Of a stretch of 64,000 nt of DNA, positions 6,089 to 64,000 are shown piece by piece. Source of the DNA: Octopus sinensis (Eukaryota); the NCBI RefSeq assembly GCF_006345805.1, contig NC_043006.1:88536001-88600000 (forward strand), written 5' to 3'. The notes beneath the pieces are model-generated. The model was not told where the DNA came from, made no database searches, and was given only the letters and a program-made list of their open reading frames with translations. Every line of letters starts with the position of its first letter. The stretch's first letter is position 1. Position numbers and translations under genes: made by a program.

Positions 6089-6595
6089 CTATTTAAAGGC
6101 CAGATAAGTGTAACGCCGCCAATGGGGGCATCGAAAAGCCGACTGTAAGAGCCCGTTTACCATCCGGCCTCTGGCAAACAAAATATGGAAGAGTTCGGAG
6201 ACACAAAGGTTGCACTGTCTTCTGCCCCTATCAAATGGGAGGGCCACCGACAAAATTGACCATTCCAGCCTATAGCTTAAGTTCGCATCCTTCAGTCGCC
6301 ATATTAGCTTACTGAGTCCCGTGGTCTGGCGCTTGTTCACGTCCCGAAAAGTTGCGTAATGGTTGGAGACACGCAAAGACAATCTTGAGGATGATGCCCC
6401 TATATAAGTGAAGGCATCTGAGTCCGTGTAAACCTTGCATTGGTAGACGGCGTTTTTGATCTTGGAGTTCGCCGACGTGAATCTTACTCTGCTAGGATTG
6501 GTTTCTGAAATTAGAACTCCGTTCCTGTCACTATATTCGTTCCGAGACCTGCAGCCGCTTACTACTCTATTTTCCACTACGTCACTATTAACCAA
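6089..6595 (-). CDS. PLE GIY-YIG endonuclease domain, N-terminally truncated
   Basis: NAVYQCKV..YIGASSSRLSLRVSNHYATF..TGLSKLIWRLKD..WSIL..CNLCVSE; open for 168 aa. Confidence 0.85.
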   Translation of the reverse strand: MVNSDVVENRVVSGCRSRNEYSDRNGVLISETNPSRVRFTSANSKIKNAVYQCKVYTDSDAFTYIGASSSRLSLRVSNHYATFRDVNKRQTTGLSKLIWRLKDANLSYRLEWSILSVALPFDRGRRQCNLCVSELFHILFARGRMVNGLLQSAFRCPHWRRYTYLAFK

Positions 6596-10560: not shown

Positions 10561-11431
10561 GCCAATAAAAAAAGCGCACTAATTCGATATTATTTGCATG
10601 TTGACCCTTCCAAGACAGAGCAAAATGTATTTTAAAACACGAATTCACGTCAAGAATCTTGAAGCCAAATGTAAAAACGATATATATTTGTGTATGTAGA
10701 CATATATACACACATATAATTTTTCATACATATATATATGTATATATGTGTGTATGTGTGTGAATGTGCATGTGTGTGTATGTGTACGTGTGTATGTGTG
10801 TGTGTGTGTGTGTATGTGTGTGTGCGTGTGTGTCTTAGCTTTGAATAAAATATATTTGTATAAAGCCATGATTAGCACGTTCAGTTGTAATAGAACACTC
10901 TATAACCTATGGGAGCAACACATAAACGCACGTGTCGTACGATCTAATGACTTCAGTCAAAGCCCAAAACAAAATGTATATTTGTAGAGGTCTAAGTAGA
11001 AATTTCCTTCCGGGATTAGTCTTGCATTGATAGGCCTTATCACGGCCGATTAAAATCGGACGTGTTAAACATGACTCTATACGAATATATGTGCACGTAC
11101 CATAATTTTTATCGTTTTACGTTCAGTTTGAGAAGAGAAAAAGAGAGACAGAGGGAAAGAAATGATGATGATGATGATGATTATGATGATAATGATGATG
11201 ATGATGATGATGATGACCACAACGATGATGACCACAACGATGGCAACGAGCTAACGGTAAGCTCCTGAGTCGCCATTTACAAAGATCAATTCGAAATGCC
11301 TTAACAATGAACAGTGACATGGCTGATTATGCACCACGTTCACTATAAAAACCTGACCTTCTCTAGTAATAACTATAAGAATCTAAGCATCGGGAACGCT
11401 AGCCGAGGCAAATATATTAAAAAAATGTCAT

Positions 11432-11840
11432 ATAGGCGCATGAGTAACTGTGTGGTAAGTAGCTTGCTTACCAATCACATGGTTCCGGGTTCAGTCCCAC
11501 TGCGTGGCACCTTGAGCAAGTGTCTTTTACTATAGCTTCAGGCCGACCAAAGCTTTGTGAGTGGATTTGGCAGACGGAAACTGAAAAGAAGCCCGTCGTA
11601 TATATTTATATGTGTATATATGCGTGTGTTTGTATGTCTGTGTTTGCCACCCCACCCCCCAAACATCGCTTGACAACCGATGCTGGTGTGTTTACGTCCC
11701 CGTAACTTAGCGGTTCGGCAAAAGAGACCGATAGAATAAGTACTAGGCTTACAAAGAATAAGTCCTGGAGTCGATTTGCTCGACTAAAGGCGGCCACAGT
11801 CAAATGACTGAAACAAGTAAAAGATTAAAAGAGTAAGAGT
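11432..11840 (+). mobile_element. SINE family B (tRNA-like head, internal microsatellite, ...GACTGAAACAAGTAAAAGA tail)
   Basis: GGTTCCGGGTTCAGTCCCACTGCG head; copies or parts at 17305-17770(-), 24950-25130, 40620-40790, 41320-41500, 48335-48510, 56660-57050. Confidence 0.8.
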
Positions 11841-12084
11841 ATAGTGGACGGAATAGTATAAGAAATATCGACAATAAAGTATTGTGCAACATTATATTCA
11901 GCTTACGTCTGTCGTTAAGTTTTGAGTTCAAATTCTGATGAGATCTACTGTACTTTTCATTTTTTGTGGGGTTAATAAAATTGATACCAGTTGAACACTG
12001 GGGTTGATGTAATCGATTTACCCACCCCCGAAATTGCAGGCCTTGAGCCATAATTTGAAATCAATATTATATTCTGTTTAAGGG

Positions 12085-16270: not shown

Positions 16271-17304
16271 GCGCATTGATGTTTCTACGAATTACATAAA
16301 CGGTCTGTTTTAGTCAAACAACCAACTGCTCACAAAACAAAACCTCATTTCAATGGAAGAACATAATGAAAATTAAGCATATCTAATAAGGGATATCACT
16401 ATATATTCTTCAAGTCATAAAGATTTACACAAAGCTTTTACATGCATTCAAATAGGGATTTATATGTTTCGTGCCCCAAGCTTCGAATATAAGTGAAATA
16501 GAAAAGTCACTGGAACTGTAATTAATCTCACGTGTAGCTTCATTAAAAATTGTAGAGAAAATTAATTTATAAAGGAAGTCTTTGCACATTATAAAGTAAA
16601 AGAGACTCCTTCTATTTCAAGTGAGCCAAATCGAGCAACAAAGCAACGTCGACATAGCAAAATCAACTGACCTAGCAGAATCGAATAACTAAAACGAGTG
16701 TCGTCTGAGTGTTTATTATTTGTAAGTGATTTATTAAATAGGTATGACGTTTGAAATTATAATGGTTATATCTAAATTGTTATTTTAATCGCACATTTAA
16801 CATTTCTAAAATGTCTTTCTGTCAAGTCTTATCAATGAAAATGTAATTGCTATTTATAACATTATTTTTATGAATTAGCATCTCGCTAATATAGAGCAAA
16901 TAGCGACAAAGGTCATTCGAAGCCACTTGAGTTTCTTCGTGTAATTTGCATATCACTCTTGGTATTTGTCTTTATATTTCCTTCACATTTCACACATCCC
17001 ACAGCAACCTTCACTAACCTCACTTGTACATTCATTCAATCCCTTGAGTGCATTGATTGCCACGAACCACGAATTTCAAAATAGCTGAAATAGCTGTCCT
17101 AACTTCCACGCTCCCAACTGCACAGACAACTTCGTAAAGTTGTACACACAATTTAGCAAGGCTACCACATATATTGTGAATAATATTGCATCTTCTGACA
17201 ACGACATCTTTACAAAACATACAAAACAATCCATTCATATATATATAGACTTACACACACACATATATATATATACATGCATTTATGTATATATATATTT
17301 TTAT

Positions 17305-17518
17305 TCTTTTACTTGTTTCAGTCATTTGAGTGCGGCCATGCTGGAATGTCACCTTGAAAGGTTTTTAGTCGAACAAATCGACTCCAGAGCAAATTTTTCA
17401 AGACTAATACTTATTTTCTCGGTCTCTTTTGCCGAAACGCTTAGTTGCGGGGACCTAAACACAGCAACACCGGTTGTCAAGCGGTGATGGAGAAACAAAC
17501 ACAAACACATACACATAG

Positions 17519-17606
<88 letters not shown>

Positions 17607-17770
17607 GATGGGCTTCTTTCAGTTTTCGCCTACAAAATCCACTCACAAGATTTGGTCGCCCAGAGGCTATAGAAAAAGAAACTTGTCCGAGGTACCACGC
17701 AGTGGTACTAAAGCCACAACTATGTGGTTGGGAAGCAAGCTTGCTGCTACACAGCCTCGCCTGCGCCTGT
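17305..17770 (-). mobile_element. SINE family B
   Basis: Reverse complement of the 11432-11840 family. Confidence 0.75.
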
Positions 17771-24918: not shown

Positions 24919-25229
24919 GTGAGTGTGTGTGTGTGTGTATATGTATGCATTTATTTGTGTGACTGTGTTCATCCGCCCACCATCGCGTGACAACCGATGC
25001 TGGTGTGTTTATGTCTCCGTAACTTAGAGGTTCGGAAAAAGAGACCGATAGAATAAGAACTTGACTAACAAGGAATAAGTCCTGGGGGCGATTTGTTCGA
25101 CAAAGGCGGTGCTCCAGCATGGCCGCAGAATATATATGTAGAAATTTATTGTGTGTGTTTACACATATATATTGAATATATACATATATATATATGCATA
25201 TATATATATATAATATATATATATATATC

Positions 25230-25423: not shown

Positions 25424-25935
25424 TCACGAAAGCTTTCTAGCAACTGCCATTTGGTGCATGAGAGAGTTCGATGCAGCTGCCCTCATCTGCCCCTCCTGCC
25501 GTGAAGTTGGTTCATCTGGGACACCTGACAGGAAGAGATCCAGCTTCATTTTAAAGACATCTGCATCCACCCCATGCAGGTCTCTCAGGTTCTTCGGGAG
25601 GATATTGAAGAGCTGTGGGCCTCGGAAGCCCAGGCTATCACAGAATCTTGTCCTACATCTTGATGGCAAGTTTGGAGTCCTAGGCACCACGCAGTGGCGC
25701 CTAGTTCTGGCATTTGCGTAACTCTCGATGCCAAAGTTCAGGACACGTCCCTCCAGGATCTTCCAGATATATATTATGGCATATCTTTCCCGCCTACGCT
25801 CCAGGGAATATAGTTTTAATCTCTTGAGTCTTTCCCAGTAGCTTACATTCTGCATAGAGGCTATCTTCTTCGTGTAGCTACGTTGGATCGCCTCGAGCTC
25901 TGTGATCAACTTGACCTCCGAAGATCCGTTCCACG
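25424..25935 (-). mobile_element. CR1/L2-group LINE, 5'-truncated, C-terminal frame intact
   Basis: ELEAIQRSYTKKI..SYWERLKRLKLYSLERRRERYAIIYIWKIL..GPQLFNILP..FKMKLDLFL. Confidence 0.88.
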
Positions 25936-26419
25936 TGGGTGGAAAGGGAGGGCAGAAATTCTTCGCTTGCATATTTTGAATTTGTTGGCACTGTTAGTTT
26001 GAACGGATCTTCGGAGGTGAAAAGTCGCCAAAAGGGTATGCTCCTACTTTCAGTGTTTACAAATCCGAATTAAGAAATTTTGAGCTGACGAAAGAAATGT
26101 CGAATTGTATTTGGCTGATCTAGAAACGTACGTTCTCAAATAATCTTTGCACTTGTGATTTTTTAATGTTTTTACCCCCATACCTTCGTGAGTTATTTTG
26201 AGTAAACACTATCTGAGAGAAATTTTCTTTAAGTATTAGAAATGGCTAAAAAAAATTTTTTTGGCTGCTATTTCTAATGAGTTCAGTATGTGGCAAAGTA
26301 ATTATTTTACTAAGCCCTTTATAAAATGTAATATTTTGAATTCGCCTTAAATGGTCCCTTACATACTGAATACTTGGTGAAATTGATTAATAATTAATTA
26401 ATTTTACCCTCAATTGTTG

Positions 26420-28656: not shown

Positions 28657-28702
<46 letters not shown>

Positions 28703-28708
<6 letters not shown>

Positions 28709-28880
28709 ATAGTTAATCCAAACATTAAAACACAAAGAGAAAATACAACAACGCGAGGACGTGGAACAAGTATAGTGTTATTGGACGCCCAGGAAAAGAA
28801 AGAAAGAAGAAGGATTTAACGTTTCGAGCGGAGCTCTTCGTCAGAAACATAAAAAAGGAAAGATCCAAGGAAGGGATACA
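28703..28880 (-). mobile_element. Hammerhead mini-element (same family as 43790-44040)
   Basis: Shares CACGTCCTCGCGTTGTTG and the GGATTAACTA(TA)n end. Confidence 0.75.
28814..28848 (-). ncRNA. Minimal hammerhead with an extra A after the core
   Basis: GTTT-CTGACGA-A-GAGC-TCC-GCTC-GAAA-C-GTT-AAAT; palindrome AACGTT. Confidence 0.72.
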
Positions 28881-42093: not shown

Positions 42094-43356
42094 TTAGGTC
42101 ATCCCATAAATAATGCGGTTTTTTCAATTGCATGAGCTAAAAGTCAGGGGAGACGGGATAAACTACCTGCATCAGCTTGCTATAAAAGCAGGTAGTAATT
42201 TTACCTTGTCTTATTTCTTAGTGCAAGTTTTGAAGAGTGTAGTCCGATTTTAACAGTTATTTTTTCAAAGCAGTAATGGAAGCAACAAAGGAGCATATTC
42301 GGCATATTTTGTTTTATGAGTTCAATAAAGGAAACAACGCAACGGAAAGTGCGAGGAATTTTATTAATACTGTATATGGGGACCGGACAATAAACGTAAA
42401 CAAGTGTGAACAGTGGTCTCAGAAATTCCGAGACGGTAACTACAGCCTAGAAGACCAGCCTCACCCCGGAAGATCTGTAGAGCTACACGAGGATGTTCTG
42501 CAAACCCTGGTGGAACAAAATCCCATCATAATTGTTGAGGAACGAGCAGAGAAGCTTGGATTTGATCATTCAACCATACACCGACACCTGTGTGCCATCG
42601 GTAAAGTCAGCAAATTGGGTCAATGGGTTCCTCACAAACTTTCCAAGTCTAATCGTGGACAGAGAGTGAATGTGTGCTTTTCTTTGCTTGACATCTCACG
42701 AATGAACCGTTTTCGACCGAATAGTGACCGGTGACGAGAAATATGTTCTCTATAGAAATGTCAAGCGCTGAAAACAATGGGTAGGGAAAGGAGAACACCT
42801 GTACCCCAGGCTAAAGAGGGTTTTCCCCCACGTAGGGTGTTGTTATTTGTTGAGTGAGATATGAAAGGTTTAGTCCACTTTGAACGTTTTAACCCGGACC
42901 ACACGATAACAAAGGAGATCTACTGCGAGCAGCTTGAGTGGCTTAAGTCAGCGCTAGAAGAAAAACGACCATCTTTGGTTTCAAAACGAAAGGTGTTCTT
43001 CTATCAGGATAATGCTCGGCTACATACAGCGAGGAGGACATTCCAATGGCTGGAGCAGTTTCAATGGGAAACGATTCCCCTCCCACCATATTCGTCAAAC
43101 GTTGCCCCATCTAATAATCATTTATTAAGCAGTCTTCAAAATCATTTGGACGGAAAAAATATGAATTCAGTAGACGACGTCAGAACAGTATTGGAGGTGT
43201 ATTTTTCGTCACGAACAAGTGAAGTTTGGAAGAGGGGCCATGGAGCATTGTAGAAAATGTAGGAGTGTATATTTTTTGATTAAAAAAGAACTTATTTTTT
43301 CTTAATTTTGAAAAATAAAAGAATTATAAAAACGCATTATTTATGGGATGACCCAA
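42094..43356 (+). mobile_element. Full-length mariner (D,D34D type), transposase broken
   Basis: TIRs TTAGGTCATCCCATAAATAATGCGG / CGCATTATTTATGGGATGACCCAA, TA TSD; ORF pieces 42276-42734 and 42861-43253 (GDEK, QDNARLH, LPPYSSNVAPSNNHL). Confidence 0.93.
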
Positions 43357-43789
43357 TATATTATTTAAATATCCACTCTTATTTCATTATTTACTATATT
43401 AAAATTGACATAACACACGAAAAATTGGTCATATTTCACGAATGTATATTTTTTACACATGGGAATGCACATTTTATGATATGCATTCCTTAATTCAATT
43501 CCTTTGCGAATCTCAGTCTGCTCATGCTGAGACACTGCTTTCAAGGTTTCTACTTAATCATTTTGAACCTTGTACTTGCTTCTAAATGGAGTTTTATTCA
43601 TCAATCTATAATTATCGAATCCAAAAGTTGTATATTTTGATACATGAGATTTATACCGGTAAACATAAAGCAGAGATGGGCACACGCACACACACACACA
43701 CACACATACATACGTGTTAGGGTCTGTGCTTGTGTGCATGTGTGTGTGCGCGTGTGTCTGTGTTCTTTGTGTATGGACATATATATAGG

Positions 43790-44040
43790 CGGAGTGGATT
43801 TGGTAGGCGGAAATTCTAAAAGTCCGTCGTGACCTAGTGTGTACCGTTGGCGATTTTTTTTCCTCTGTCTTCCCTTCTCTGGATCTTTCCTTCTCCTATG
43901 TTTCCGACGAAGAGCTCCGCTCGAAACGTTAAACCCTCCTTCTTCCCTTCTTTCCTGAGCGTCCAATAATACTATACTTGTTCCACGTCCTCGCGTTGTT
44001 GTGTTTTTTGTGTTTTCTTGTTTGGATTAACTATATATAT
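43790..44040 (+). mobile_element. Hammerhead mini-element
   Basis: Homologous to 28703-28880; ends GGATTAACTA(TA)n. Confidence 0.75.
43900..43934 (+). ncRNA. Minimal hammerhead variant (U4C)
   Basis: GTTT-CCGACGA-A-GAGC-TCC-GCTC-GAAA-C-GTT-AAAC. Confidence 0.6.
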
Positions 44041-44045
44041 ATATA

Positions 44046-45302
44046 TTCGATGACATTTGGGGGGGAATTAGAAGGTTTGCTCTGGCCCCTACTCTTCCTT
44101 TTGGGAAGAGTAGCCAGTGCAACTTCCTCTGTTGATTTGATGAGGCTGCTGTATACTTCCTCAATGTTCTCAGCATCTATTTCAGAAGTAGACAGAGATT
44201 GAAATTTGTTATAGACCTCAATAGTAAATTGTTTGGACATATCGGGGTTAGATAAGACTTCCTCCCAGTCGATCATTTTGATCGGGTGAGGCTTAGTTTT
44301 TTTGGATGAGCGAAGACTAAGCTTAACGGTAGCTGATACAATTCTGTGGTCAGAGCCGACAGAACTAAAGGAAGAGTAGGATCTCGAGTCCTTAACACTA
44401 TTGCGCCATTTCTTTCGAAAGATGAGGTAGTCAATTTGTGCCCTATCACCAAGTGGGGACTCAAATGTCCAAAGTTGACCTTTTGGTTTCATAAAAGAAT
44501 TGTTGGAGGTGTAGAGATTAAATTCCTCCAAGAAGTCTTTGAGCATTTCTCCGTTCCGATTGGTTTTAGAGTTGAAAGTAAACTTGGTCTCATCGGGTCC
44601 TAGTCTAGCATTCAGATCACCAGCTATAACCAGAAAATTATGGAGAGGTACTTGCTCAATGGTTGAACGAAGGGTTGTATAGAAATTTTCAATTTCGTCT
44701 GCCACAGACGAATTATGTGGGCTATACACACATACCAATGTTGTTTTTGGGTTTCCATCTATCTCAAGCACCATAATTCTAGGTGAGATTGACTCTATAC
44801 CCAAGAGAGTATCACTAGCCTTTGATGAAAGTAGAAATCCGATACCTCCAACTGTTGAATTAACAGTATTCTTTGATGCTGAGGAGGTTACAAGTTGATA
44901 AGAACCGACTTGATGGTATTTGAGGATGTTGTCAGGGTGGTAAAATCGGTGTTCTTGGACAGCTATTATATCAATGCCATGTGATTCTGCATTTGCACCA
45001 AGTTCTTCTAGACGGCCAAGAGAGCCGAGGGTGCGGGCATTGAGGGTGCTGAGTATCGAAAGATTTTTACAGCTGATGAGGTGTTTGTTTGGTGTTGTTT
45101 CGTTGGGGGCTGACTCTTCTCCATCAGGTGATACCCGTCTGTTAAGATTGAGGGCATCACCGTCAATGGATGCCCTTGGAGGTGCAACATGATCAGAGAC
45201 AGGACCCGGCAAAGCAGGGGCTGGACCTACATCCGCAGGTATACCATTAGGTCTGGTTCCCTGGGGAAGAGGAACCCTGGTGCAGTTAATTGTAAATTCC
45301 AT
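44046..45302 (-). CDS. RTE LINE 5' half: apurinic-type endonuclease, open frame
   Basis: LSTLNARTL, IIAVQEHR, GGIGFLLS, VYSPH, GDLNARLG, QIDYLIF, SDHRIV; 5'UTR continues to about 45670. Confidence 0.93.
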
Positions 45303-46337
45303 AGTCTTTTCAAATGGCTAATAATGTGTGCGCGCGCCACTACTACACACATTGGAAAGCATTGTACAACCAAGTACTAAAGAAGATCTTTCCTCCTCCA
45401 TGAAACAAAGCTGTTCCCGCTGGACGTCAACCCAGTACTTCTAAGCTACGGGCTGAGTGATTTATTGTAAGGTTATCTCCCTAGATAGATTGCCTTCACT
45501 ACGGCTAAGGAGCCCTTTCTACCCCACTGACACAGGTTGTACTGGTTTACAGTTTACCAGTAGTAGGATCCGACGCTGCATACAACAGACCTGACCTGAC
45601 AAGATCGTTCAGAATTGGTTGAGCAATGGCATTAATGGGAAGGACAAGTGAGGGAGAGCCATTTAGTACTTCAATATTTGCGTCTGCGTATGTTTGTATA
45701 AGTGTGAATAATGTGTTTATGTGCGAGAAGGCACATGCTTTTGTCTATCGTTAATTTAATTTAAATTTTTCTCACGTTTTTCCCTTTTAAAGTATTTCTT
45801 TTTAAAGTAATTTACACCCTGGAGGGAGGGCTGAGGGTTTGTTTTTACTGTAGATTCTCTTTTCTCCCAACAAAGAAAAAGAAAGGGATTTTTCATTGGT
45901 GTCACCGGTATAATTCAGACACTGGGAGAAACATCTCGATGTCATTCAAACTTGCATGTTTCTAATTGTAGCAGCAGTAGCAGCGGCAGCAAGTTCTGGC
46001 AGCAGCCGCAGCAATGTAGCAGCAACTACTGCTTTCGTAGGGTGAGAGGAAGAACGTTCGGTCAGAGAGAGTTCAAATGTCTGCTATATTGTTAATAGAA
46101 CTTTCGAACATACACTGACCTTGACTTGGAGAAAAATCAAGGAGGGACCGACTATGAACAGTACTTGTGAATAGAGTCGTGTACGAGCAGAGAGAAACTA
46201 TAAAGAGTATTTTTCTTTTTTCCTTCTTATTCTCCATATGTTTTATTTCTGCGATTACAATAAAAGGTATGTTCGCATATTTCGGGTAGTCAAGAAGAAA
46301 ATAAAGGTTAGCAGGTGTTTACGTCCATAATTTTAGC

Positions 46338-48221
46338 AGAAACCATCTAAAGTCTATATCACTAGCTTACCACCGTTCTCCATCCCAGTCACTGAAGATC
46401 CAACTCATAGCTGCCAGGAAGAATCTTGATGAGGCTTACTTGAACGCCGAGGTCGAATTTATCAATGGCAAAATTAGTAAACTATCGAAAGAGCACATTA
46501 GTAAAAAACACCATCTCGCCTGGAAATCCATCAAAGACCTATCAGGCAAAAATTCTGGGTCATCAATTAGAATTAAAGGGGGATCAGCTAAGAAGCGTTT
46601 AGAAAATTGGTCAACCCATTTTAAAAACCTCCTTGGGAAGAATGCCAAAATCCCTGATAACCCCACTCTCCCAAGTGTGCCTATATCAGACACGCTGGAC
46701 ATCAACACCTCCCCTTTTACCATATTTGAACTAACAGCAGCCACCAAGCAACTAAAAGCCTCGAAAGCATTTGGTCCCGACAACATTCCGGCTGTGATTT
46801 GGAAGGATGATAGATTTCACACACTTTTGCTTAACCTCTGCAACCACACACTTTCCACCTTTGTCGCTCCAAAGATTTGGCACCAATCTCAAATCATTCC
46901 AATACCCAAAAAAGGCGATTTGTCCCTCGTCACCAACTACAGGGGCATATCTCTAATGTCAATTGCTGCAAAACTGTACAACAAACTGATCCTAAATCGT
47001 CTTGTCCTTTTTGTTGAACCTTTGCTCCGAAAGAACCAAAATGGATTCAGACATGGGCGCTCAACGCTGAGCCAGATACTATGCCTGCGCAGACTTATTG
47101 AAGAATCAAAAGCATTTAATCGCGATCTTGCAATGGTATTTGTAGACTTTTCTAAAGCGTTCGATTCTGTAGATAGGTACAAGATGTTTGAAATCCTTAA
47201 GCTCTATGGGATACCAGACAAAATTATTTCTGCCATCAAGGTCCTCTACACAGATACGTCTTCAACCATCTTAACCCCTGATGGAGAAACATCATCTTTC
47301 TCGATCGAGGCCGGAATACTGCAGGGAGACACACTCGCCCCATTTCTTTTCATCATTGTTGTTGATTATGTGCTACGTATGTCAGTTGATACCATCTCTG
47401 GCAAGGGCTTTGAAATAAAACCAAGAAGAAGTTCCAGACACCCAGCTGAGTACTTGACAGACACTGACTTTGCTGACGACATCGCTCTTATCAGTGATTC
47501 TCTCTCCAATGCCCAGTCTCTTTTACAATCTCTTGAACAAGCCTCAAATTGTGTAGGTCTTTACCTCAATGAGACCAAAACTGAATACATAAACAAGTGC
47601 CTGTCCAACAGTGATTGCATCATCCACACTCTCAACAGTGCACCTTTAAATATGGTTTCTGATTATAAATATCTTGGGTCATACATATCATCATCTGGAA
47701 AAGACTTTCTAACTAGAAAGGGTATGGCCTGGTCAGCCTGTAATGACATGCATAAGATCTGGTCATCAAATCTAAGTAGAGACTTCAAACTTGAAATATT
47801 CAAAGCCACAGTCGAACCAATTCTACTATATGGCTCAGAAACCTGGACGTTATCAAAGAAGCTTGAGAGGCGGTTGGATGGAACCTACACTCGCCTCCTT
47901 ATGAGAGCTCAAAATCTCTCGTGGAGGCGCCATCCAACTAAAATGCAAATATATGGGAAATTACCACCTGTGTCATCTCTTGTGAAAGGTAGGAGAGTCC
48001 AGTTTGCTGGACATTGTTGTAGAGCTGAAAAAGAAGTAATTTCTACTCTTCTCCTCTGGAAGCCATCTACTCGCAACACCAGAGGGCGCACACTCTCCTA
48101 CCCTGATGTAATCTCCAGGGATACAGGCATCCAGCAACAGGACCTCCGTAATGCTATGATGGACCGTGAAGTCTGGCGCAACATGGTAAATTCCATTGTC
48201 TCGACCACGGTCGAACAATGA
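46338..48221 (+). CDS. RTE LINE 3' half: reverse transcriptase, open frame
   Basis: Open from 46338 (RNHLKS...); GPDNIP, NYRGISL, QNGFR, FVDFSKAFDSV, GILQGDTLAPFLF, FADD, YKYLGS, LLYGSETW; (TGA)n tail then (TA)n. Confidence 0.95.
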   Translation, partial: RNHLKSISLAYHRSPSQSLKIQLIAARKNLDEAYLNAEVEFINGKISKLSKEHISKKHHLAWKSIKDLSGKNSGSSIRIKGGSAKKRLENWSTHFKNLLGKNAKIPDNPTLPSVPISDTLDINTSPFTIFELTAATKQLKASKAFGPDNIPAVIWKDDRFHTLLLNLCNHTLSTFVAPKIWHQSQIIPIPKKGDLSLVTNYRGISLMSIAAKLYNKLILNRLVLFVEPLLRKNQNGFRHGRSTLSQILCLRRLIEESKAFNRDLAMVFVDFSKAFDSVDRYKMFEILKLYGIPDKIISAIKVLYTDTSSTILTPDGETSSFSIEAGILQGDTLAPFLFIIVVDYVLRMSVDTISGKGFEIKPRRSSRHPAEYLTDTDFADDIALISDSLSNAQSLLQSLEQASNCVGLYLNETKTEYINKCLSNSDCIIHTLNSAPLNMVSDYKYLGSYISSSGKDFLTRKGMAWSACNDMHKIWSSNLSRDFKLEIFKATVEPILLYGSETWTLSKKLERRLDGTYTRLLMRAQNLSWRRHPTKMQIYGKLPPVSSLVKGRRVQFAGHCCRAEKEVISTLLLWKPSTRNTRGRTLSYPDVISRDTGIQQQDLRNAMMDREVWRNMVNSIVSTTVEQ

Positions 48222-48524
48222 TGAATGATGATGATATATATATACAAACACACACACGTGTGTATGTGCGCGCGCGCGCACTCACGTATGTATGCATTTA
48301 TGCGTGTGTCTATGTGTTTGAGTTTGTCTCCCATAACTGCTTGACAACTGGTGTTGTGTTTGCGACCCCATAATCCAGCATTTCGGTAAAAGTAACCGAT
48401 AGAATAAGTAATAGGCTTAGAAAACGTAAGTCCTATTTGTTCGACTAAAGCCCTTCCAGGCGGTACCCCAGTATGTCTGCAGTCAAATGACTAAAACAAG
48501 TAACAGAGATAAATGATATATATA

Positions 48525-49415
48525 CATAGAGTGCGGTGAATAAAAATTATCGTCTAAATACGCCAAAAGGAAAATAATACTGACATCTCATTTTAAGAGA
48601 TATATTTACCAAAATTATATAAAAATATCTTGAAATACTAAAGAATAAATTTATTCAATAAAATCGCCAATGGCTTCAACCACAGCCGCCAGACGCCTTC
48701 GGAACCTCCTGCAACTCTTCTGGACGGTCTCTTTGTTTAAGTAGGCGAATGTTGTCAGAATCCTGGCCTTCAGTTCATCTTTCGTGTTAGAAGGAGTTTT
48801 GTTGGTCTCTCCCCCAACTGCGTCCCACATATAATAATGAAGGGGTTTGTAGTGTGGTGAGTTAGGTGCCCAGATGTTAGGGGTGATGTGGTTGCAGAAA
48901 TTATCTGACAGCCACGACTGAGTTCTCCTATTTGTGTGGCATGGTGTAGAGTCCTGTTGCTAGACATAGGTTCTTCCAGAAGGCACCCGCTTGACCCAGG
49001 GCAGCACTGCCTCTTCCAGGCGCTTGATGTAGGCTTCTGTGTTTAGACTAAAGCTGCGTGGGACGATGGAGTCATAACGTCGCCATCACAAGTGATTGCT
49101 CCAAACACCATGATGTTGACTGGATGTTTGATTTTTATCACTCTCGGTACATGTCATCAGATTGCACTGTTCTCAGATTGACACTCAAACAATCCGAAAT
49201 GCTCATATTGTAGCTTCAGGCGCGAATGCCAAGCAGTGCAACATGTCGTTCCCAAATTTCTGCCTGGGGGAATTGCGCCATGGTGCTGTTTTTTCTTACA
49301 GATAGTGCTCAACTGACTCTACTATACTGTGTAGTTGACAAAATCAAAAACAAACAACGCGCCTGAAAGAAATTAAAAATATATGATGGCGACAATTTAC
49401 CCATCGCACCACCTG
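48525..49415 (-). mobile_element. Decayed Tc1/mariner-superfamily element
   Basis: Diverged TIRs; minus-strand C-terminus W..V..ETNKTPSNTKDELKARI..CRRFRRRLAAVVEAIGDFIE*. Confidence 0.7.
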
Positions 49416-49489: not shown

Positions 49490-49680
49490 CATGTGAATAG
49501 TTGGCGATTTTTCCCTCTGTCTTCCATTCTATTGGACTTTCCTCTGTTTCCGAAGAAGAGCGTTGCTCGAAACGTTGAACCATCTTTCTTTCCTTCCCTG
49601 AACGTCTGCTAAAACTTTACATGTATCACGTCCTCGCGTTGTTGTTTATTTTTGTATTTGTTCTTCTTTTTGAGTATTTA
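49490..49680 (+). mobile_element. Hammerhead mini-element, related subfamily
   Basis: GTTT-CCGAAGA-A-GAGC-GTT-GCTC-GAAA-C-GTT-GAAC at 49546-49580; shares CACGTCCTCGCGTTGTTG. Confidence 0.7.
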
Positions 49681-56590: not shown

Positions 56591-57949
56591 TTTATGTCAT
56601 GTTTTTTCAAACACTCAAGGATGACACGATAAATCGTGAAGCGTTCCAGCTTTTTGTGGCAAAGGCGTGGTTGTGTGATAAGAAGTTTGCTTTCCAGCCA
56701 CATGGTTCCCGTTTCATCCCTATTGCATGGCACTTTGGACAAGTGTCTTCTATTATAGCCCCAGGCCAACCAAAGCTGTGTGAGTAGATCTGGTAGACGG
56801 AAACCGAGACAAGCTCGATGTATATATTTATATACTTGTGTGCCTGTTTGTCTCCCGTCACCGCTTGAGAACCTGTGTTGGTTTGTTTATGTCCCCTACA
56901 ATGTAGAGTTTCAGCTAAAAGAGACCAATAGAATGTATACCAAACTTTAAAAATAAGCAAAACTACTGGGATCTATTTGTTCGACTAAACCCTTAAAGAC
57001 GAAAAACTGAACCCCAGCATGGCTGCAGTCCAATGTTTAAAACAAGTAAATGATGAAATATATTGCTTATATTTCGGACCTAACTGAACCTGTGTTATTT
57101 TTACTTCATCGGAATTTCCATGATACGACAGCTACATGATTTCATCTCTAAGTTATTTGATTTTCGAAAGACACTGAATCTGTTCTTCCGTATCGTCTTC
57201 ATCTTCTTCGTTAATTGTTGTGGTAGGGGGTCATCGTTGTTTTGTAGAACTTATTAATCCAAACAAGTGGATGTATAACAGAAATGAAGTTGAAAATGCA
57301 CTGATAATATATTAGAATTAATTAGAATTTGATTAGATTTTAAAATATGAGAATACACGTGACCGGTTTCACATTAGATTTTGAAAAGAGTCGGTATATG
57401 GAGCGAGCTGTGTACCCTATATGGGGCGAACTGAGTACGATATATGGAGCAAGCTGTGCCGCTGTTATAAAAAAGATTTCCTGTCTCTAAAGAACGAATA
57501 TAGCTCAGAACTCTATCCGTTAACGTACAAATTTATTCTCAACGTTTATATATTAAGCCCATGTGACAGTCGCGTGACAAGGTCACATAAAAGCTTTTCA
57601 CATTGAACATATCAGATGACAATTACAAAAGAGTGATATGAATAAATGATATTTATTTCACCGTGTTTCCTCTCTCATTTTATATTGGAAATAATAATAA
57701 CTGAAATGATTTTAATTAAAAATATAATTGTTTACCTAAAAGTGTTATAGATAATTATTGCTTATTATTCTTCCAAACAGTAGTGTTATCAATTAGTGCT
57801 AATTCACTCTCATTGAACGTGTTAAAACTATATTCCTTCTTTGTTAACAACGTGTGAAGTAAGATAATGAGATGTGGGGTAAATAAGACAGATGATAGCC
57901 GCTACATGAAATTTGATCTTCTTAAAAACAGCACAAGTAGACATTGATA

Positions 57950-61134: not shown

Positions 61135-64000
61135 AAGAGCAATAAAGATTCAAGTTAATTTTAAAAAATTTACTTGAATATGGTACCTAACTTAGATGCA
61201 CCAAAAAAAACTATACTGATTTAACAATACAGTAATGTGGGGTGATTATAAGCGAGAAAGAAGCAACAAGAATGGATAGGTTTTTAGTACGATCGTTTCA
61301 TACAAGGACAGGTTTTATTAAAAGTTGCAAAGATTACAGCATATAAACGAGTCCCGTACTCATCAGCTAAAATACATGTAAGTTCTCTAGACATCCTAGT
61401 GTTTGAGGCTATACTCATGAAGTAATGTAGATAATTAAACAGATTTCTAAAGTTCATTAAAGTTCTTTAAAGATGATGTACAGTCTTATCACAGAATTTT
61501 AAAAGAGTTTTGATAGCATCACAGAGAAGGTGACCTAATCCATATGAATTTCCATAGATATGATGAGGGATTATATACTCACAGAAGACAAATTTATCCA
61601 TTGTTAATTACAACGAGGTGGGTCTCAATTCCTGCTTATTAGCATTACAGAGAGGGTGAATTAATCCTTTGTATATATGCACAGATTCCAATGGTGTAGA
61701 TGTAAATTTCCAGAGAAATGGAGATGAATTTCATATTCACAGGCGATAAATTTTACAATGGTTGAACACAATGAGGTAGGTATCAATCCTTGTTATATGA
61801 TTAGGTGTTTGCCATATTAATCACATTACTGCTATTCACAAGAGGATGTAGCTATTTAACTCTTAAAGGCTGAAGGGCTTACTAGATCGGCCAAGAATAG
61901 AGAAGGGAATAGAAGAAAAGAGAGAAAATAATGGAGGGGGGAGCAAAAAGGGGAGGGGAAAGGGGGACTAAAAGAGAAGAGAAAAGGAAACAGAGAATAA
62001 GAAGAAGAAAAGAAGAAAGAGAAAGAGAAAGAAATAGGGAAAGAAGGGAAAAAAAGAAAAAGAAAAAAAAGAGGGTTCTAGTTATACAGAAGAGCTAGTA
62101 GACTGTAAGTCTGGTTTTAATCAACAGGCATCTAGGAACTAGAGGGGAATATTATTCTTTGACCAGTAAACCGTTAATTTATTGCTGTTGAAATCAGCTA
62201 TGAGTTTAAAGAGAATCTAAAGAGATAACACAGTCAGGGGTTAAGGGGTCAGATGCTAAAATCACCAGAAAATACATAGGAAAATCTAAGTATAATCTTA
62301 TCAAAAAGTCATTAAAAATTTACTTATTTAATTTATTCATTTTATTGTCTTAAGGAGTTGTCGTTATTATTCATACATTGACTGACTACAGGTCAAATCT
62401 TATAAGATCATTTACAAGGTGTTAGGGGATTGTCTATCATAATGAAGATAATCATATTATCACCGAGGGAATAGCCTTATTTATTTAATTATGAAATAGA
62501 ATTATGGGGCTACAGTAACTAATTATAATTTATTAGAGTTATGCTATTTAAATTAGATTAAGTTAGGAATTAAAATTAAATATTACAATTAAGATTTAAA
62601 ATTAAGAATTAAAAATTGTGAGTTTGAAATTAAATAAAGCCTCAATTAAGTAGCGAATAAGTACTATTCATTTCCCTGTTCTCAAAAAACTGATGCAGAT
62701 ATAAGGAAAAAGATAAAGATAACTGTAATGTGAGAACTCTTAGTTATCTACTTAAAGCATTGCTATACTAGTAGAAATCAAGTTTATATCTATCTATCTA
62801 GTTATGAATATTCCAATCATTTAAAATATTTTAAAGTCTTCAATTTAGCGTGGACACAAACTTGACCTAGTTCGATATGGTTATTCAATAAGTTTTATGT
62901 TACTATGCTTTAGAATTTCGTACGTCTCCATGGAGCATAGTTGACAACCAACCCTACTATTTTTATACGGAATTGCTCTCCTAACTATTTCCCAATTAAG
63001 GGTATAATTTTTGTTATTATTTTTGAGTTCCCAGATTTGTTTGAAAGTGTGGTGGTACCAGCTTTATGACGTAATTTAAAAGTCGAGATGTGATTTCTAA
63101 ACTCTGGAAAAAATTAATTGTACAGCCAATGTAAAAATATTTGTTATTCTCCGTGGATATGGTACATTTATAGATTACATTATTTTCCCTACATAGACCA
63201 GGTGCCGGGCATTTTGATTTTATTCTACACTTACACACAGGAGGAACAACTTCAGGCCTTGGATTATTCCTGGGTAGATGTTTAAGGTTCCTATTATTTT
63301 GATTATCATTTCTATAGTTGGTGCTGATATCTAAAGTATTGTTATTATTTATTGATCCTTCCGTTTCATCATTTAGGTGTAAAGTCCTACCAAGATTTCT
63401 TATATTATTCGTAATGTTATTATTATTGTTAGTCTTTTTATCCAGCTGTATATTATTGTTATAGATATCACTGATATTTTCATTCTCCTTATTTTCTCCA
63501 TTAGCCTTATTTCTATTATTTCTATTATTAACAATATTACTTCTATTAATATCGGCATTGTTATTATTACTATTAATGTTAATGTTATTAGTCATTCTGT
63601 GGTTACTATTTCACCTATGTTTTGATAGTTCCTATTGCTGTTTTTATTGTTGGTAGTATTATTGTTATTGCTATTGGTATTCATTCTGATATTATTATTT
63701 TTATTTCTATCTTCCTGGCTAGTTTAATGTTGTTATTATAATTTTAGCTATTAAAGTGGACATATTTGGGAGGGTTGAATAAGAAATCCTAACTGTTTTC
63801 CTAGAAATAATTCTATGATATCTATGAGAGATAGGGAAATTCTTTTCCAGAATCACTTTGAATTTGTTCTGTATATCCGATTGTATCGCACAGTTGAAAG
63901 GAATATTCAGCCATAATATATCTTTTTTATAAAATTTAGGGTTCGTAGAATTACTACTATTCATCTCACCGGAGTTATTGTATTTATTACCATTATTTTA
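61135..64000 (-). mobile_element. Penelope-like element 3' portion (thumb/linker, Asn-rich insert, GIY-YIG, long 3' region with hammerhead)
   Basis: KKDILWLNIPFN..KNFPISHRYHRIISRKTVRISYSTLPNM; CKCRIKSKCPAPGLCRENNVIYKCTI..FYIGCT; ends at (TA)n near 61130. Confidence 0.85.
61282..61372 (-). ncRNA. Type I hammerhead ribozyme, canonical core
   Basis: Stem I TTTTAG/CTAAAA; CTGATGA (61366-61360); stem II GTACGGGAC/GTCCTTGTAT; GAAA (61299-61296); palindrome ACGATCGT; GTA (61290-61288). Confidence 0.88.

What the first reader, a model, noticed from the sequence alone, without database searches (positions are those of the whole stretch)
44046..48244. An apparently complete RTE LINE cut mid-ORF with its 5' half flipped, both halves still stop-free
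Seen: the minus strand carries 5'UTR, ATG 45302 and the endonuclease, ending ...KPSNSPPNVIE at 44046. The plus strand resumes RNHLKSISLAY... at 46338 and runs through RT to the stop at 48221. Together they give about 1045 aa, and (TA)n lies on both outer sides. The geometry (breakpoint outermost, 5' end inward) is that of twin-priming 5' inversion, established for L1 and to my knowledge little documented for RTE. The alternative is an in-place 2.3-kb inversion. The intact frames imply a young family; potentially active RTE LINEs have been reported in octopus.
Basis: partly seen in the sequence, partly recalled or inferred. Interest (0 to 1): 0.78.

Follow-up and report, generated by a model that had tools for sequence, protein, structure and literature searches.

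The report
Young RTE retrotransposon with flipped 5' half
One recent insertion of an RTE-type jumping gene has its front half reversed at a break that loses at most three bases, the signature of "twin priming" known mainly from human L1, with 738 unexplained extra bases at the inner junction.

Summary
The minus strand (45302->44046) encodes the first 419 codons, including the endonuclease. The plus strand (46338->48221) encodes the remaining 627 codons, including the reverse transcriptase. Joined, the 1046 aa align end to end with intact 1043-1048 aa relatives. Against the closest relative's DNA, the two halves abut with only 3 nt (GCT, one Ala codon) missing and nothing duplicated. Both halves show matching identity to each of ten related copies, so they came from one element. 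The 4.19-kb unit ends in the family's (ATG)n tail and sits between two (TA)n tracts, which would happen by chance about 4e-5 of the time. These tracts look like one split or duplicated target inside a SINE's internal microsatellite. Twin priming during integration is the best explanation (about 0.65). A later in-place inversion or a mis-assembly cannot be excluded without reads or an empty allele. The next 738 nt (45600-46337), at the inversion junction, match no relative. They could be a 5' transduction, a lineage-specific 5' UTR block or captured filler. This is a new member of a known kind, of moderate interest.

The parts
43791..43830 (+). Context: the end of the 5' half of an abundant SINE (GGAGTGGATTTGG...AAGTCCGTCGT). 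This is the part that directly precedes the internal (TA)n(TG)n microsatellite in intact copies.
   Evidence: Compared by eye with intact SINE copies at 11430-11850 and 17750-17280(-). Coordinates.
43846..44031 (+). Context: short repeat 'A' (GTTGGCGATTTTT...GTTTGGATTAAC). Its copies end in a dinucleotide microsatellite.
   Evidence: Other copies lie at 28698-28876(-) with 88% identity and at 49492-49669 with 77% identity. Both run from ...TTAAC or ...TTTAC into a 40-70 nt tract of (TA/CA)n.
44032..44046 (.). Left (TA)7T tract. Proposed to be the 5' copy of the target-site duplication, or the left part of the split TA target. The T at 44046 is shared with the element's GAA codon, giving 1 nt of microhomology.
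44046..45302 (-). Inverted segment, coding part: codons 1-419 of the single ORF (ATG at 45302, APE-type endonuclease, linker). It ends at ...PPNVIE, which corresponds to L001 position 1668.
   Evidence: ORF. Pfam Exo_endo_phos and Exo_endo_phos_2. DNA identity to L001, L009 and L010 is 81%. Protein alignment.
45303..45599 (-). Inverted segment, family 5' UTR (about 297 nt). It reaches the canonical 5' terminus, TCAGGTCAGGT, at 45599-45589.
   Evidence: 87% identical to L001 up to 45560. The 5' terminus is defined by L011 and L001, which share sequence up to TCAGGTCAGGT and then have unrelated flanks. The same 11-mer occurs in the window at the expected offset.
45600..46337 (-). Spacer U: 738 nt between the canonical 5' terminus of the inverted segment and the start of the direct segment. 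Its origin is unknown. Candidates are a 5' transduction, a lineage-specific 5' UTR block, or sequence captured by template switching. The strand is given on the assumption that it was copied together with the inverted segment.
   Evidence: No similarity to any of 11 related loci, to the rest of the window, to Rfam or to Pfam, and no long ORF. It contains an imperfect (GCA)n tract at 45970-46013.
46338..48221 (+). Direct segment: codons 420-1046 (linker and reverse transcriptase) plus the stop codon. It starts at AGAAACC, which corresponds to L001 position 1672.
   Evidence: ORF. Pfam RVT_1. 81% DNA identity to L001, L009 and L010. Alignments.
48219..48235 (+). 3' tail TGATGAATGATGATGAT, an (ATG)n-type microsatellite that overlaps the stop codon. 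There is no separate 3' UTR and no poly(A).
   Evidence: Relatives end in the same way: L002, L003, L007, L008, L009 and L010 carry (ATG)3-5 directly at the stop codon. TRF result.
48236..48244 (.). Right (AT)4A tract. Proposed to be the 3' copy of the target-site duplication. It continues into (CA)n(GT)n and then the 3' half of the SINE (about 48290-48513).

Best explanation
A single retrotransposition event placed one RNA of a roughly 3.45-kb RTE-clade LINE into a (TA)n tract inside a SINE's internal microsatellite. The RNA carried 738 extra nt at its 5' end.

The proposed steps are as follows.
1. The bottom-strand nick primed reverse transcription on the (AUG)n tail. This made the direct segment, running from the 3' end back to element position about 1519.
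2. The top-strand 3' overhang of the same staggered break primed internally on the same RNA, just upstream of that point. It was extended to the RNA's 5' end, which made the inverted segment.
3. The two cDNA ends were then joined.

The result is a dead-on-arrival copy. Its ORF is split into an EN part on the minus strand and an RT part on the plus strand, with at most 3 nt lost at the break.

What is shown: the geometry, the precision of the break, the shared origin of both halves, the canonical 5' terminus and 3' tail, and the TA tracts on both sides. What is inferred: the order of events, that the TA tracts are a target-site duplication, and that U was part of the template RNA.
For: 1. The joined halves are collinear over 100% of intact 1043-1048 aa relatives.

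2. In L001 coordinates the inverted piece ends at 1668 and the direct piece starts at 1672. Only GCT is missing, and nothing is duplicated. For two unrelated fragments, the chance of abutting within +/-3 nt of a roughly 3.4-kb element is about 0.2%.

3. Identity to ten related loci is the same for both halves and ranks them almost the same way (inverted / direct):
- L009: 81.3% / 81.4%
- L001: 81.2% / 81.0%
- L010: 80.9% / 81.3%
- L007: 77.0% / 78.1%
- L006: 75.4% / 75.4%
- L002: 74.5% / 75.8%
- L004: 74.2% / 76.5%
- L005: 74.3% / 71.2%
- L008: 73.6% / 72.6%
- L003: 72.0% / 71.3%

4. The inverted piece reaches the canonical 5' terminus TCAGGTCAGGT. The direct piece ends in the family's (ATG)n tail.

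5. The whole unit, U included, lies between two TA tracts: a 10-nt direct repeat 4197 nt apart, with a joint chance of about 4e-5. The repeat length fits the 10-12 bp TSD peak reported for the RTE clade (PMC4245944, PMC6007223).

6. The flanks rebuild a plausible empty site: SINE 5' part, repeat A, (TA)n(CA)n(GT)n, SINE 3' half. Intact SINE copies and copies of repeat A show this layout.

7. [quoted passage not shown] A long overhang from a TSD of at least 10 bp is thought to be needed for the second priming (PMC4245944).

8. There is no stop codon or frameshift in 3138 nt. For a copy that cannot be under selection, this implies roughly under 1-2% divergence since insertion.
Against: - Plain twin priming does not predict the 738-nt spacer U at the inversion junction. 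It needs an extra assumption: a longer template RNA or a template switch.
- Microhomology at the 5' junction is only 1 nt (T at 44046). In L1 5' inversions this junction usually shows microhomology (PMC2912911).
- A TA-tract TSD cannot be told apart from a split microsatellite.
- Relatives with visible flanks do not insert into TA tracts, so the target gives no family-specific support.
- No empty allele, sequencing reads or same-subfamily copy could be examined.
- In cell-culture assays, 5' inversions were nearly confined to human L1 (PMC4245944). No paper documenting twin priming for RTE or BovB was found in the library searched.
Confidence: 0.65

Rival explanations
1. Post-insertional in-place inversion. 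A normal collinear insertion, with or without U at its 5' end, was later inverted over about 2.29 kb by two double-strand breaks and end joining.
For: The final geometry would be the same. The clean loss of at most 3 nt at the ORF break fits end joining. (TA)n tracts are frequent in this genome, with 132 in 64 kb, and could be fragile. This route needs no twin priming in a clade where it has not been documented.
Against: The left breakpoint would have to fall exactly at the boundary between the TA tract and the inserted unit. No TA bases were carried to the inner junction (46330-46340 reads TTTTAGC|AGAAACC). If instead U were ancestral flank, the element would have no TSD at its 5' terminus (CGATCTTG|TCAGG against ATATATATA at the 3' side). 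U would also be a 738-nt unique block sitting inside a SINE's internal microsatellite. No inverted repeats lie at the two breakpoints that could drive homologous recombination. This route needs two events, twin priming needs one.
Confidence: 0.15
2. Assembly artefact. The genome really carries a collinear full-length element, and the assembler or a chimeric read flipped 2.29 kb.
For: Young, near-identical LINE copies are hard to assemble. Earlier octopus assemblies lacked full-length copies (PMC9115989). No reads were available here.
Against: There are no N bases or gaps in 43500-48800. The junctions are not at repeat boundaries but in mid-ORF and at a unique 738-nt block. The structure is not a fold-back, because the halves are complementary parts rather than a sequence plus its own reverse complement. 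A mis-join through a shared repeat would give a collinear element, not an inverted one.
Confidence: 0.07
3. Two independent events. A 5'-truncated RTE copy (46338-48235) and, next to it, a separate 3'-truncated copy in the opposite orientation (44047-45599), with U as the DNA between them.
For: 5'-truncated LINE copies are common, and U is unrelated to the family.
Against: The truncation points coincide to within 3 nt, a chance of about 0.2%. 3'-truncated LINE copies with an intact 5' end are not a normal product of target-primed reverse transcription. Both halves are equally diverged from every relative. Both frames are intact. TA tracts bound the pair as a single unit.
Confidence: 0.02

Closest known systems
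5'-inverted human LINE-1 insertions made by twin priming (Ostertag & Kazazian 2001; census in PMC5668948 and PMC2912911)
   Same: The inverted 5' segment has its 3'-most element position against the 5' flank. The direct 3' segment carries the normal tail. The break coordinates nearly abut, with a small deletion. Direct repeats flank the whole composite. The product is dead on arrival.
   Different: The clade is RTE, not L1: a single ORF and an (ATG)n tail instead of poly(A). The inverted segment runs to the canonical 5' terminus, so the insertion is full length. In L1 the inverted segment is usually itself truncated. A 738-nt block of non-family sequence sits at the inversion junction, where L1 shows only small insertions. 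Only 1 nt of microhomology is present at the 5' junction.
The few 5' inversions reported outside human L1 in human cells: one Nimb-2_DR insert in chicken DT40 cells, none for ZfL2-1 (PMC4245944)
   Same: Both are non-L1 LINEs with a TSD of about 10-12 bp. That paper's model holds that a long 3' overhang is needed for the second priming, and an RTE with a roughly 10-nt TA repeat fits it.
   Different: That was a single event in a cell-culture assay in a vertebrate system. Here the insertion is a natural genomic one from a different clade, and the mechanism is inferred from structure alone.
Octopus RTE elements reported as potentially active: RTE-2_OV, the O. bimaculoides RTE consensus (PMC9115989), and the 13 recently active RTE families in O. 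vulgaris (PMC13282606)
   Same: [quoted passage not shown]
   Different: RTE-2_OV has a 1109-aa ORF with an N-terminal zinc finger and UTRs of about 600 nt. This element has a 1046-aa ORF, no extra Pfam domain and a canonical 5' UTR of about 297 nt, so it belongs to another family. Sequences of the published elements were not available for comparison. That the window comes from an octopus was not verified.
LINE-1 5' transduction and chimeric insertions made by template switching (PMC7026601 mentions 5' transductions; U6/L1 chimeras in PMC4476161 and PMC6789731)
   Same: Non-element sequence is joined to the canonical 5' terminus in the same orientation as the element. This is what U looks like if it was part of the template or was reached by a template jump.
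   Different: The source of U is unknown. No snRNA or other known RNA was found in it. There is no poly(A) at the U/element junction. Neither phenomenon has been described for RTE, to my knowledge.

Membership tests
RTE clade of non-LTR retrotransposons | A single long ORF with an N-terminal APE-type endonuclease followed by a reverse transcriptase, and no RNase H or other added domains | tested here: met
   Pfam finds Exo_endo_phos and Exo_endo_phos_2 at aa 88-322 and RVT_1 in the second half, with nothing else above threshold. Relatives are collinear at 1043-1048 aa.
RTE clade of non-LTR retrotransposons | A compact element of about 3.2-3.5 kb with short UTRs | tested here: met
   The canonical part is 297 nt of 5' UTR, 3141 nt of ORF and a 14-nt tail, about 3.45 kb. 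The related full-length copy L009 is 3414 nt. The extra 738 nt (U) lies outside this.
RTE clade of non-LTR retrotransposons | A 3' end made of a short microsatellite-like repeat directly after or overlapping the stop codon, with no poly(A) | tested here: met
   TGATGAATGATGATGAT at 48219-48235. The tail is (ATG)3-5 in L002, L003, L007, L008, L009 and L010.
RTE clade of non-LTR retrotransposons | The RT domain groups with RTE, BovB and related elements in a phylogeny of LINE reverse transcriptases | not tested
   No named reference RTE sequences were at hand. Database relatives carry no informative names.
Twin-priming (5'-inverted) LINE insertion | The 5' segment is inverted relative to the 3' segment. 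The break point of the inverted segment lies against the 5' flank and its 5' end points inward. | tested here: met
Twin-priming (5'-inverted) LINE insertion | The two segments cover adjacent parts of one template, with only a small deletion or duplication at the break | tested here: met
   L001 position 1668 abuts 1672, with 3 nt (GCT) missing and no duplication. Both halves are equally diverged from all relatives.
Twin-priming (5'-inverted) LINE insertion | A target-site duplication flanks the whole composite | tested here: inconclusive
   ATATATATAT occurs on both sides, with a chance of about 4e-5. A TSD cannot be told apart from a split (TA)n microsatellite.
Twin-priming (5'-inverted) LINE insertion | Microhomology at the 5' junction and at the inversion junction | tested here: inconclusive
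   The 5' junction has 1 nt (T at 44046). The inversion junction cannot be scored because the origin of U is unknown.
Twin-priming (5'-inverted) LINE insertion | The composite arose in one step: the empty allele lacks all of it and no collinear intermediate exists | not testable with these tools
   The source genome, reads and other individuals are not in the collections. The exact-product look-up found nothing and two pattern scans found nothing.

The most novel reading that the evidence does not exclude
A natural, full-length, twin-primed insertion of an RTE-clade LINE in a mollusc that also carries a 738-nt 5' transduction or a template-switch product. This would show that twin priming is a general outcome of target-primed reverse transcription in LINEs with TSDs of about 10 bp, not a peculiarity of L1 in human cells. 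The transduced block would also tag the still-active source copy.
Probability: 0.3. Interest if true: 0.55.

Novelty: new member of a known kind. Interest (0 to 1): 0.42.

Why it matters
5' inversions are used as a hallmark of L1 integration. In cell-culture assays they appeared almost only with human L1 in human cells (PMC4245944). A clean natural example in the RTE clade would support the idea that the length of the target overhang decides whether the second strand can prime, rather than the L1 proteins as such.

For genome annotation, such copies are easily called as two unrelated fragments. That undercounts full-length, recent insertions.

The intact frames in a copy that cannot be under selection mark a very recent event. 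They therefore point to a family that is probably still active in this genome.

If U is a 5' transduction, it identifies the source locus.

Tried and rejected
**Same-subfamily copies.** None could be obtained.
- The best protein relative is 82% identical.
- The window's 423-aa product is not on record.
- Two exact-pattern scans of JGI metagenome contigs found nothing: one of a conserved 5' UTR 27-mer and one of the 25-mer spanning the junction of U with the 5' terminus.
- The window holds no other copy.

**Origin of U (45600-46337).** Nothing was found.
- BLASTN at word size 7 and TBLASTX against the window and against 11 related loci gave no hit.
- Local alignment scores matched those of shuffled sequence.
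- Rfam at E <= 1 returned only microsatellite look-alikes outside U.
- Pfam on the six longest ORFs found nothing.
- U's GC skew has the same sign as the inverted half, but 17% of window segments reach that value, so this says nothing.
- The sigma-70 and terminator scan does not apply to a eukaryotic element.
- I ran no further search on U's spurious ORFs. The database plainly lacks this species' copies, so a negative result would say nothing.

**Position of the 5' end.** I first placed it at 45560, where BLAST homology stops. I moved it to 45599 after L011 and L001 showed that the subfamily terminus is TCAGGTCAGGT.

**Explanations rejected.**
- Fold-back artefact: there is no self-complementary duplication.
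- Homologous recombination between inverted repeats: none lie at the breakpoints.
- U as a later insertion at the junction: it has no TSD and no tail.
- Priming at the UAUAU motif 15-20 nt downstream of the break: this would have produced a duplication, and none is seen.

**Names.** Cluster members carried no names that help assign the clade.
Full report
**1. What is there**

The minus strand carries an ORF from ATG 45302. After 419 element codons (...KPSNSPPNVIE, with GAA at 44048-44046) it runs into a TA tract and stops at 44031. The plus strand is open from 46305 and reads RNHLKSISLAY... from 46338 to the stop codon at 48219-48221. Pfam places an APE-type endonuclease (Exo_endo_phos, Exo_endo_phos_2) in the first piece and RVT_1 (E = 8e-32) in the second, with nothing else above threshold. 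There are no N bases in 43500-48800.

**2. The halves are two parts of one element**

I joined the two translations (1046 aa) and searched the protein collection. Intact proteins of 1043-1048 aa cover 100% of the query collinearly at 69-82% identity.

I fetched the DNA of eleven related copies, L001-L011, all from marine or other ENA metagenome assemblies. Against the closest, L001:
- window 44065-45560 (minus strand) matches L001 1652-150 at 81.2% identity;
- window 46338-48170 matches L001 1672-3500 at 81.0% identity.

A base-by-base alignment across the break shows that relatives read ...GAA GCT AGA AAY.... The window's inverted piece ends at ...ATC GAA and the direct piece begins at AGA AAC. 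In L001 numbering the pieces end at 1668 and start at 1672. Three bases (one Ala codon) are missing and nothing is duplicated. The repeat finder also sees no shared sequence between the halves.

The two halves have matching identities to ten of these relatives and rank them almost the same way:

| Locus | Inverted half | Direct half |
|---|---|---|
| L009 | 81.3% | 81.4% |
| L001 | 81.2% | 81.0% |
| L010 | 80.9% | 81.3% |
| L007 | 77.0% | 78.1% |
| L006 | 75.4% | 75.4% |
| L002 | 74.5% | 75.8% |
| L004 | 74.2% | 76.5% |
| L005 | 74.3% | 71.2% |
| L008 | 73.6% | 72.6% |
| L003 | 72.0% | 71.3% |

Two unrelated fragments would abut within +/-3 nt of a 3.4-kb element about 0.2% of the time. A 3'-truncated LINE with an intact 5' end is also not a normal product of integration. 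I therefore treat the two pieces as one event.

**3. Ends of the element**

*3' end.* The stop codon is the start of TGATGAATGATGATGAT (48219-48235). Six relatives end in (ATG)3-5 at the same place. This is the RTE habit of a microsatellite tail with no poly(A).

*5' end.* Homology to L001 at 87% identity stops at 45560, at CTGGTAAACTGTAAACC.... L001, L009, L010 and L011 turned out to be 99.7-99.9% identical copies of one young subfamily. L011 and L001 share a further 35 nt upstream and then diverge completely into different flanks. Their true terminus is TCAGGTCAGGT. The window has exactly this 11-mer at 45599-45589, at the matching offset. The chance of that within +/-10 nt is about 5e-6, by my calculation.

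The canonical 5' UTR is therefore 45303-45599 (297 nt), and the canonical element is about 3.45 kb. The related full-length copy L009 is 3414 nt.

**4. The unexpected part**

Between the canonical 5' terminus (45599) and the start of the direct piece (46338) lie 738 nt, which I call U. U has:
- no similarity to any of the eleven related loci;
- no similarity to anything else in this repeat-rich window;
- no match to Rfam or Pfam;
- no long ORF.

It may be a lineage-specific 5' block, but that is not shown.

**5. Flanks**

The unit 44047-48235 is bounded on the left by (TA)7T (44032-44046) and on the right by (AT)4A (48236-48244). ATATATATAT is reported as a direct repeat 4197 nt apart. TA tracts are common here, with 132 of at least 8 nt in 64 kb. 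Even so, a random edge abuts one only about 0.6% of the time, and both edges about 4e-5.

Further out on the left lie the last 40 nt of the 5' half of an abundant SINE (43791-43830) and a short repeat 'A' (43846-44031). The other copies of 'A' end in a (TA/CA)n tract. On the right the TA tract continues as (CA)n(GT)n into the 3' half of the same SINE (about 48290-48513). Intact SINE copies in the window have (TA)n(TG)n between their halves.

The joined flanks thus rebuild a plausible uninterrupted site. This argues that everything between the TA tracts, U included, came in by insertion.

**6. Mechanism**

The layout is that of twin priming. The break point of the inverted segment lies against the 5' flank. 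Its 5' end points inward. The direct segment keeps the normal tail. The break coordinates nearly abut, and direct repeats flank the composite. [quoted passage not shown]

A 3-nt loss fits the footprint of a primer annealed just 3' of the first copied base. A TSD of about 10 nt fits the RTE clade peak of 10-12 bp (PMC4245944, PMC6007223). It also fits the argument that a long overhang is needed for second-strand priming (PMC4245944).

The main rival is a later in-place inversion, which requires one of two things. Either the left breakpoint fell exactly at the edge of the inserted unit, with no TA bases moved to the inner junction. Or U is ancestral flank, in which case the element has no TSD at its 5' terminus and a 738-nt unique block sits inside a SINE's microsatellite. 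No inverted repeats lie at the breakpoints.

Mis-assembly is unlikely on structural grounds (no gaps, junctions not at repeat edges, not a fold-back). It cannot be excluded without reads.

My estimates are: twin priming 0.65, in-place inversion 0.15, assembly artefact 0.07, two independent events 0.02, and the remainder for something not considered.

**7. What U may be**

There are three readings, none of them tested.
- (a) A 5' transduction: the template RNA started upstream of the source copy.
- (b) A 5' UTR block acquired by this subfamily after it split from the L001 lineage. Octopus RTE families are reported with longer UTRs, for example about 600 nt in RTE-2_OV (PMC9115989).
- (c) Sequence added when the reverse transcriptase jumped from the 5' end of the RTE RNA to another template, or filler captured during joining.

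That the inverted piece passes cleanly through the canonical terminus into U fits all three. No poly(A) or known small RNA lies at the junction, which argues against a jump onto a polyadenylated mRNA end or an snRNA.

**8. Age**

A copy with a split ORF cannot be maintained by selection. Yet 3138 coding nt carry no stop codon or frameshift. In this sequence 4.2% of single substitutions would create a stop. With indels at 10-20% of the substitution rate, the chance of staying intact falls to 5% at 0.5-0.9% divergence, or at 2.3% if indels are ignored.

The window copy differs at 22 of 496 sites that are invariant in nine full-length relatives. Each of those relatives, tested the same way, differs at 4-16 such sites. 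The copy is on its own branch, so this is not clear evidence of decay. The insertion is young and the family was probably active recently.

**9. Comparison and novelty**

This is an RTE-type element by architecture, size and tail. RT phylogeny was not tested. It is a different family from RTE-2_OV (1109 aa with a zinc finger; PMC9115989).

The structure is a known kind, a 5'-inverted LINE insertion, in a clade where I found no documentation in the searchable library. In assays, 5' inversions outside human L1 were nearly absent (PMC4245944). It was not verified.

**10. Limits**

No same-subfamily copy, empty allele or read data could be reached. The decisive steps are listed separately.

Noticed in passing
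L001, L009, L010, L011 (whole loci): Four full-length RTE copies with intact ORFs come from different metagenome samples (one a Tara Oceans scaffold, three other ENA assemblies) and are 99.7-99.9% identical to each other. This points to a very young, probably active subfamily in an unidentified marine animal. L011 and L001 have different 5' flanks, which defines the 5' terminus as TCAGGTCAGGT.
   Followed up: partly
L010:1-145 and L008:223-490: A roughly 67-nt unit of the 5' UTR (GGGTAGATGGG...GGAGTAAACCC...) is present twice: in tandem in L010 and about 200 nt apart in L008. This suggests a monomer-like, expandable 5' UTR in this RTE group.
   Followed up: no
window 45561-45588 (minus strand): Between the conserved 5'-terminal 11-mer and the conserved CTGGTAAACTG, the window has 28 nt that bear no resemblance to the 24 nt in L001 and L011. 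Both sides of this patch are 87-100% identical, so it is a small replaced patch in the 5' UTR.
   Followed up: no
window 44064-44073 (minus strand): The window copy has one extra codon (a C7 run, ...AATTCCCCCCCAAATG...) about 20 nt upstream of the break, compared with all relatives. It is an in-frame 3-nt indel.
   Followed up: no
window 42276-43253 (+): Remnant of a mariner/Mos1-type DNA transposon. It has an HTH_48 domain (E = 5e-18) and partial Transposase_1/DDE_3 in two ORFs, just upstream of the RTE locus.
   Followed up: partly
window 43846-44031; 28698-28876 (-); 49492-49669: A roughly 190-nt repeat family ('A': GTTGGCGATTTTT...GTTTGGATTAAC) whose copies sit between dinucleotide microsatellites. 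It may be a short retroposon that lands in, or ends with, microsatellite sequence.
   Followed up: partly
window 11430-11850; 17280-17750 (-); 56680-57060; 24940-25107; 48290-48513: An abundant SINE of about 400 nt with an internal (TA)n(TG)n microsatellite. The window as a whole holds 132 TA tracts of at least 8 nt and 137 dinucleotide tracts of at least 12 nt in 64 kb.
   Followed up: partly
L004:270-560: A MITE-like insert with terminal inverted repeats (CTCTCATGTCCCTAATAGTAGGGGG... / ...CCCCCTACTATTAGGGACATGAGAG) lies directly at the 5' end of a related RTE copy.
   Followed up: no
window 25424-25972 (-), 6089-6595 (-), 63017-63595 (-): ORFs of 168-192 aa with no Pfam match. The first resembles the C-terminal region of a LINE ORF. 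The other two share a ...Y(F)YIG... motif and may be transposon remnants.
   Followed up: partly
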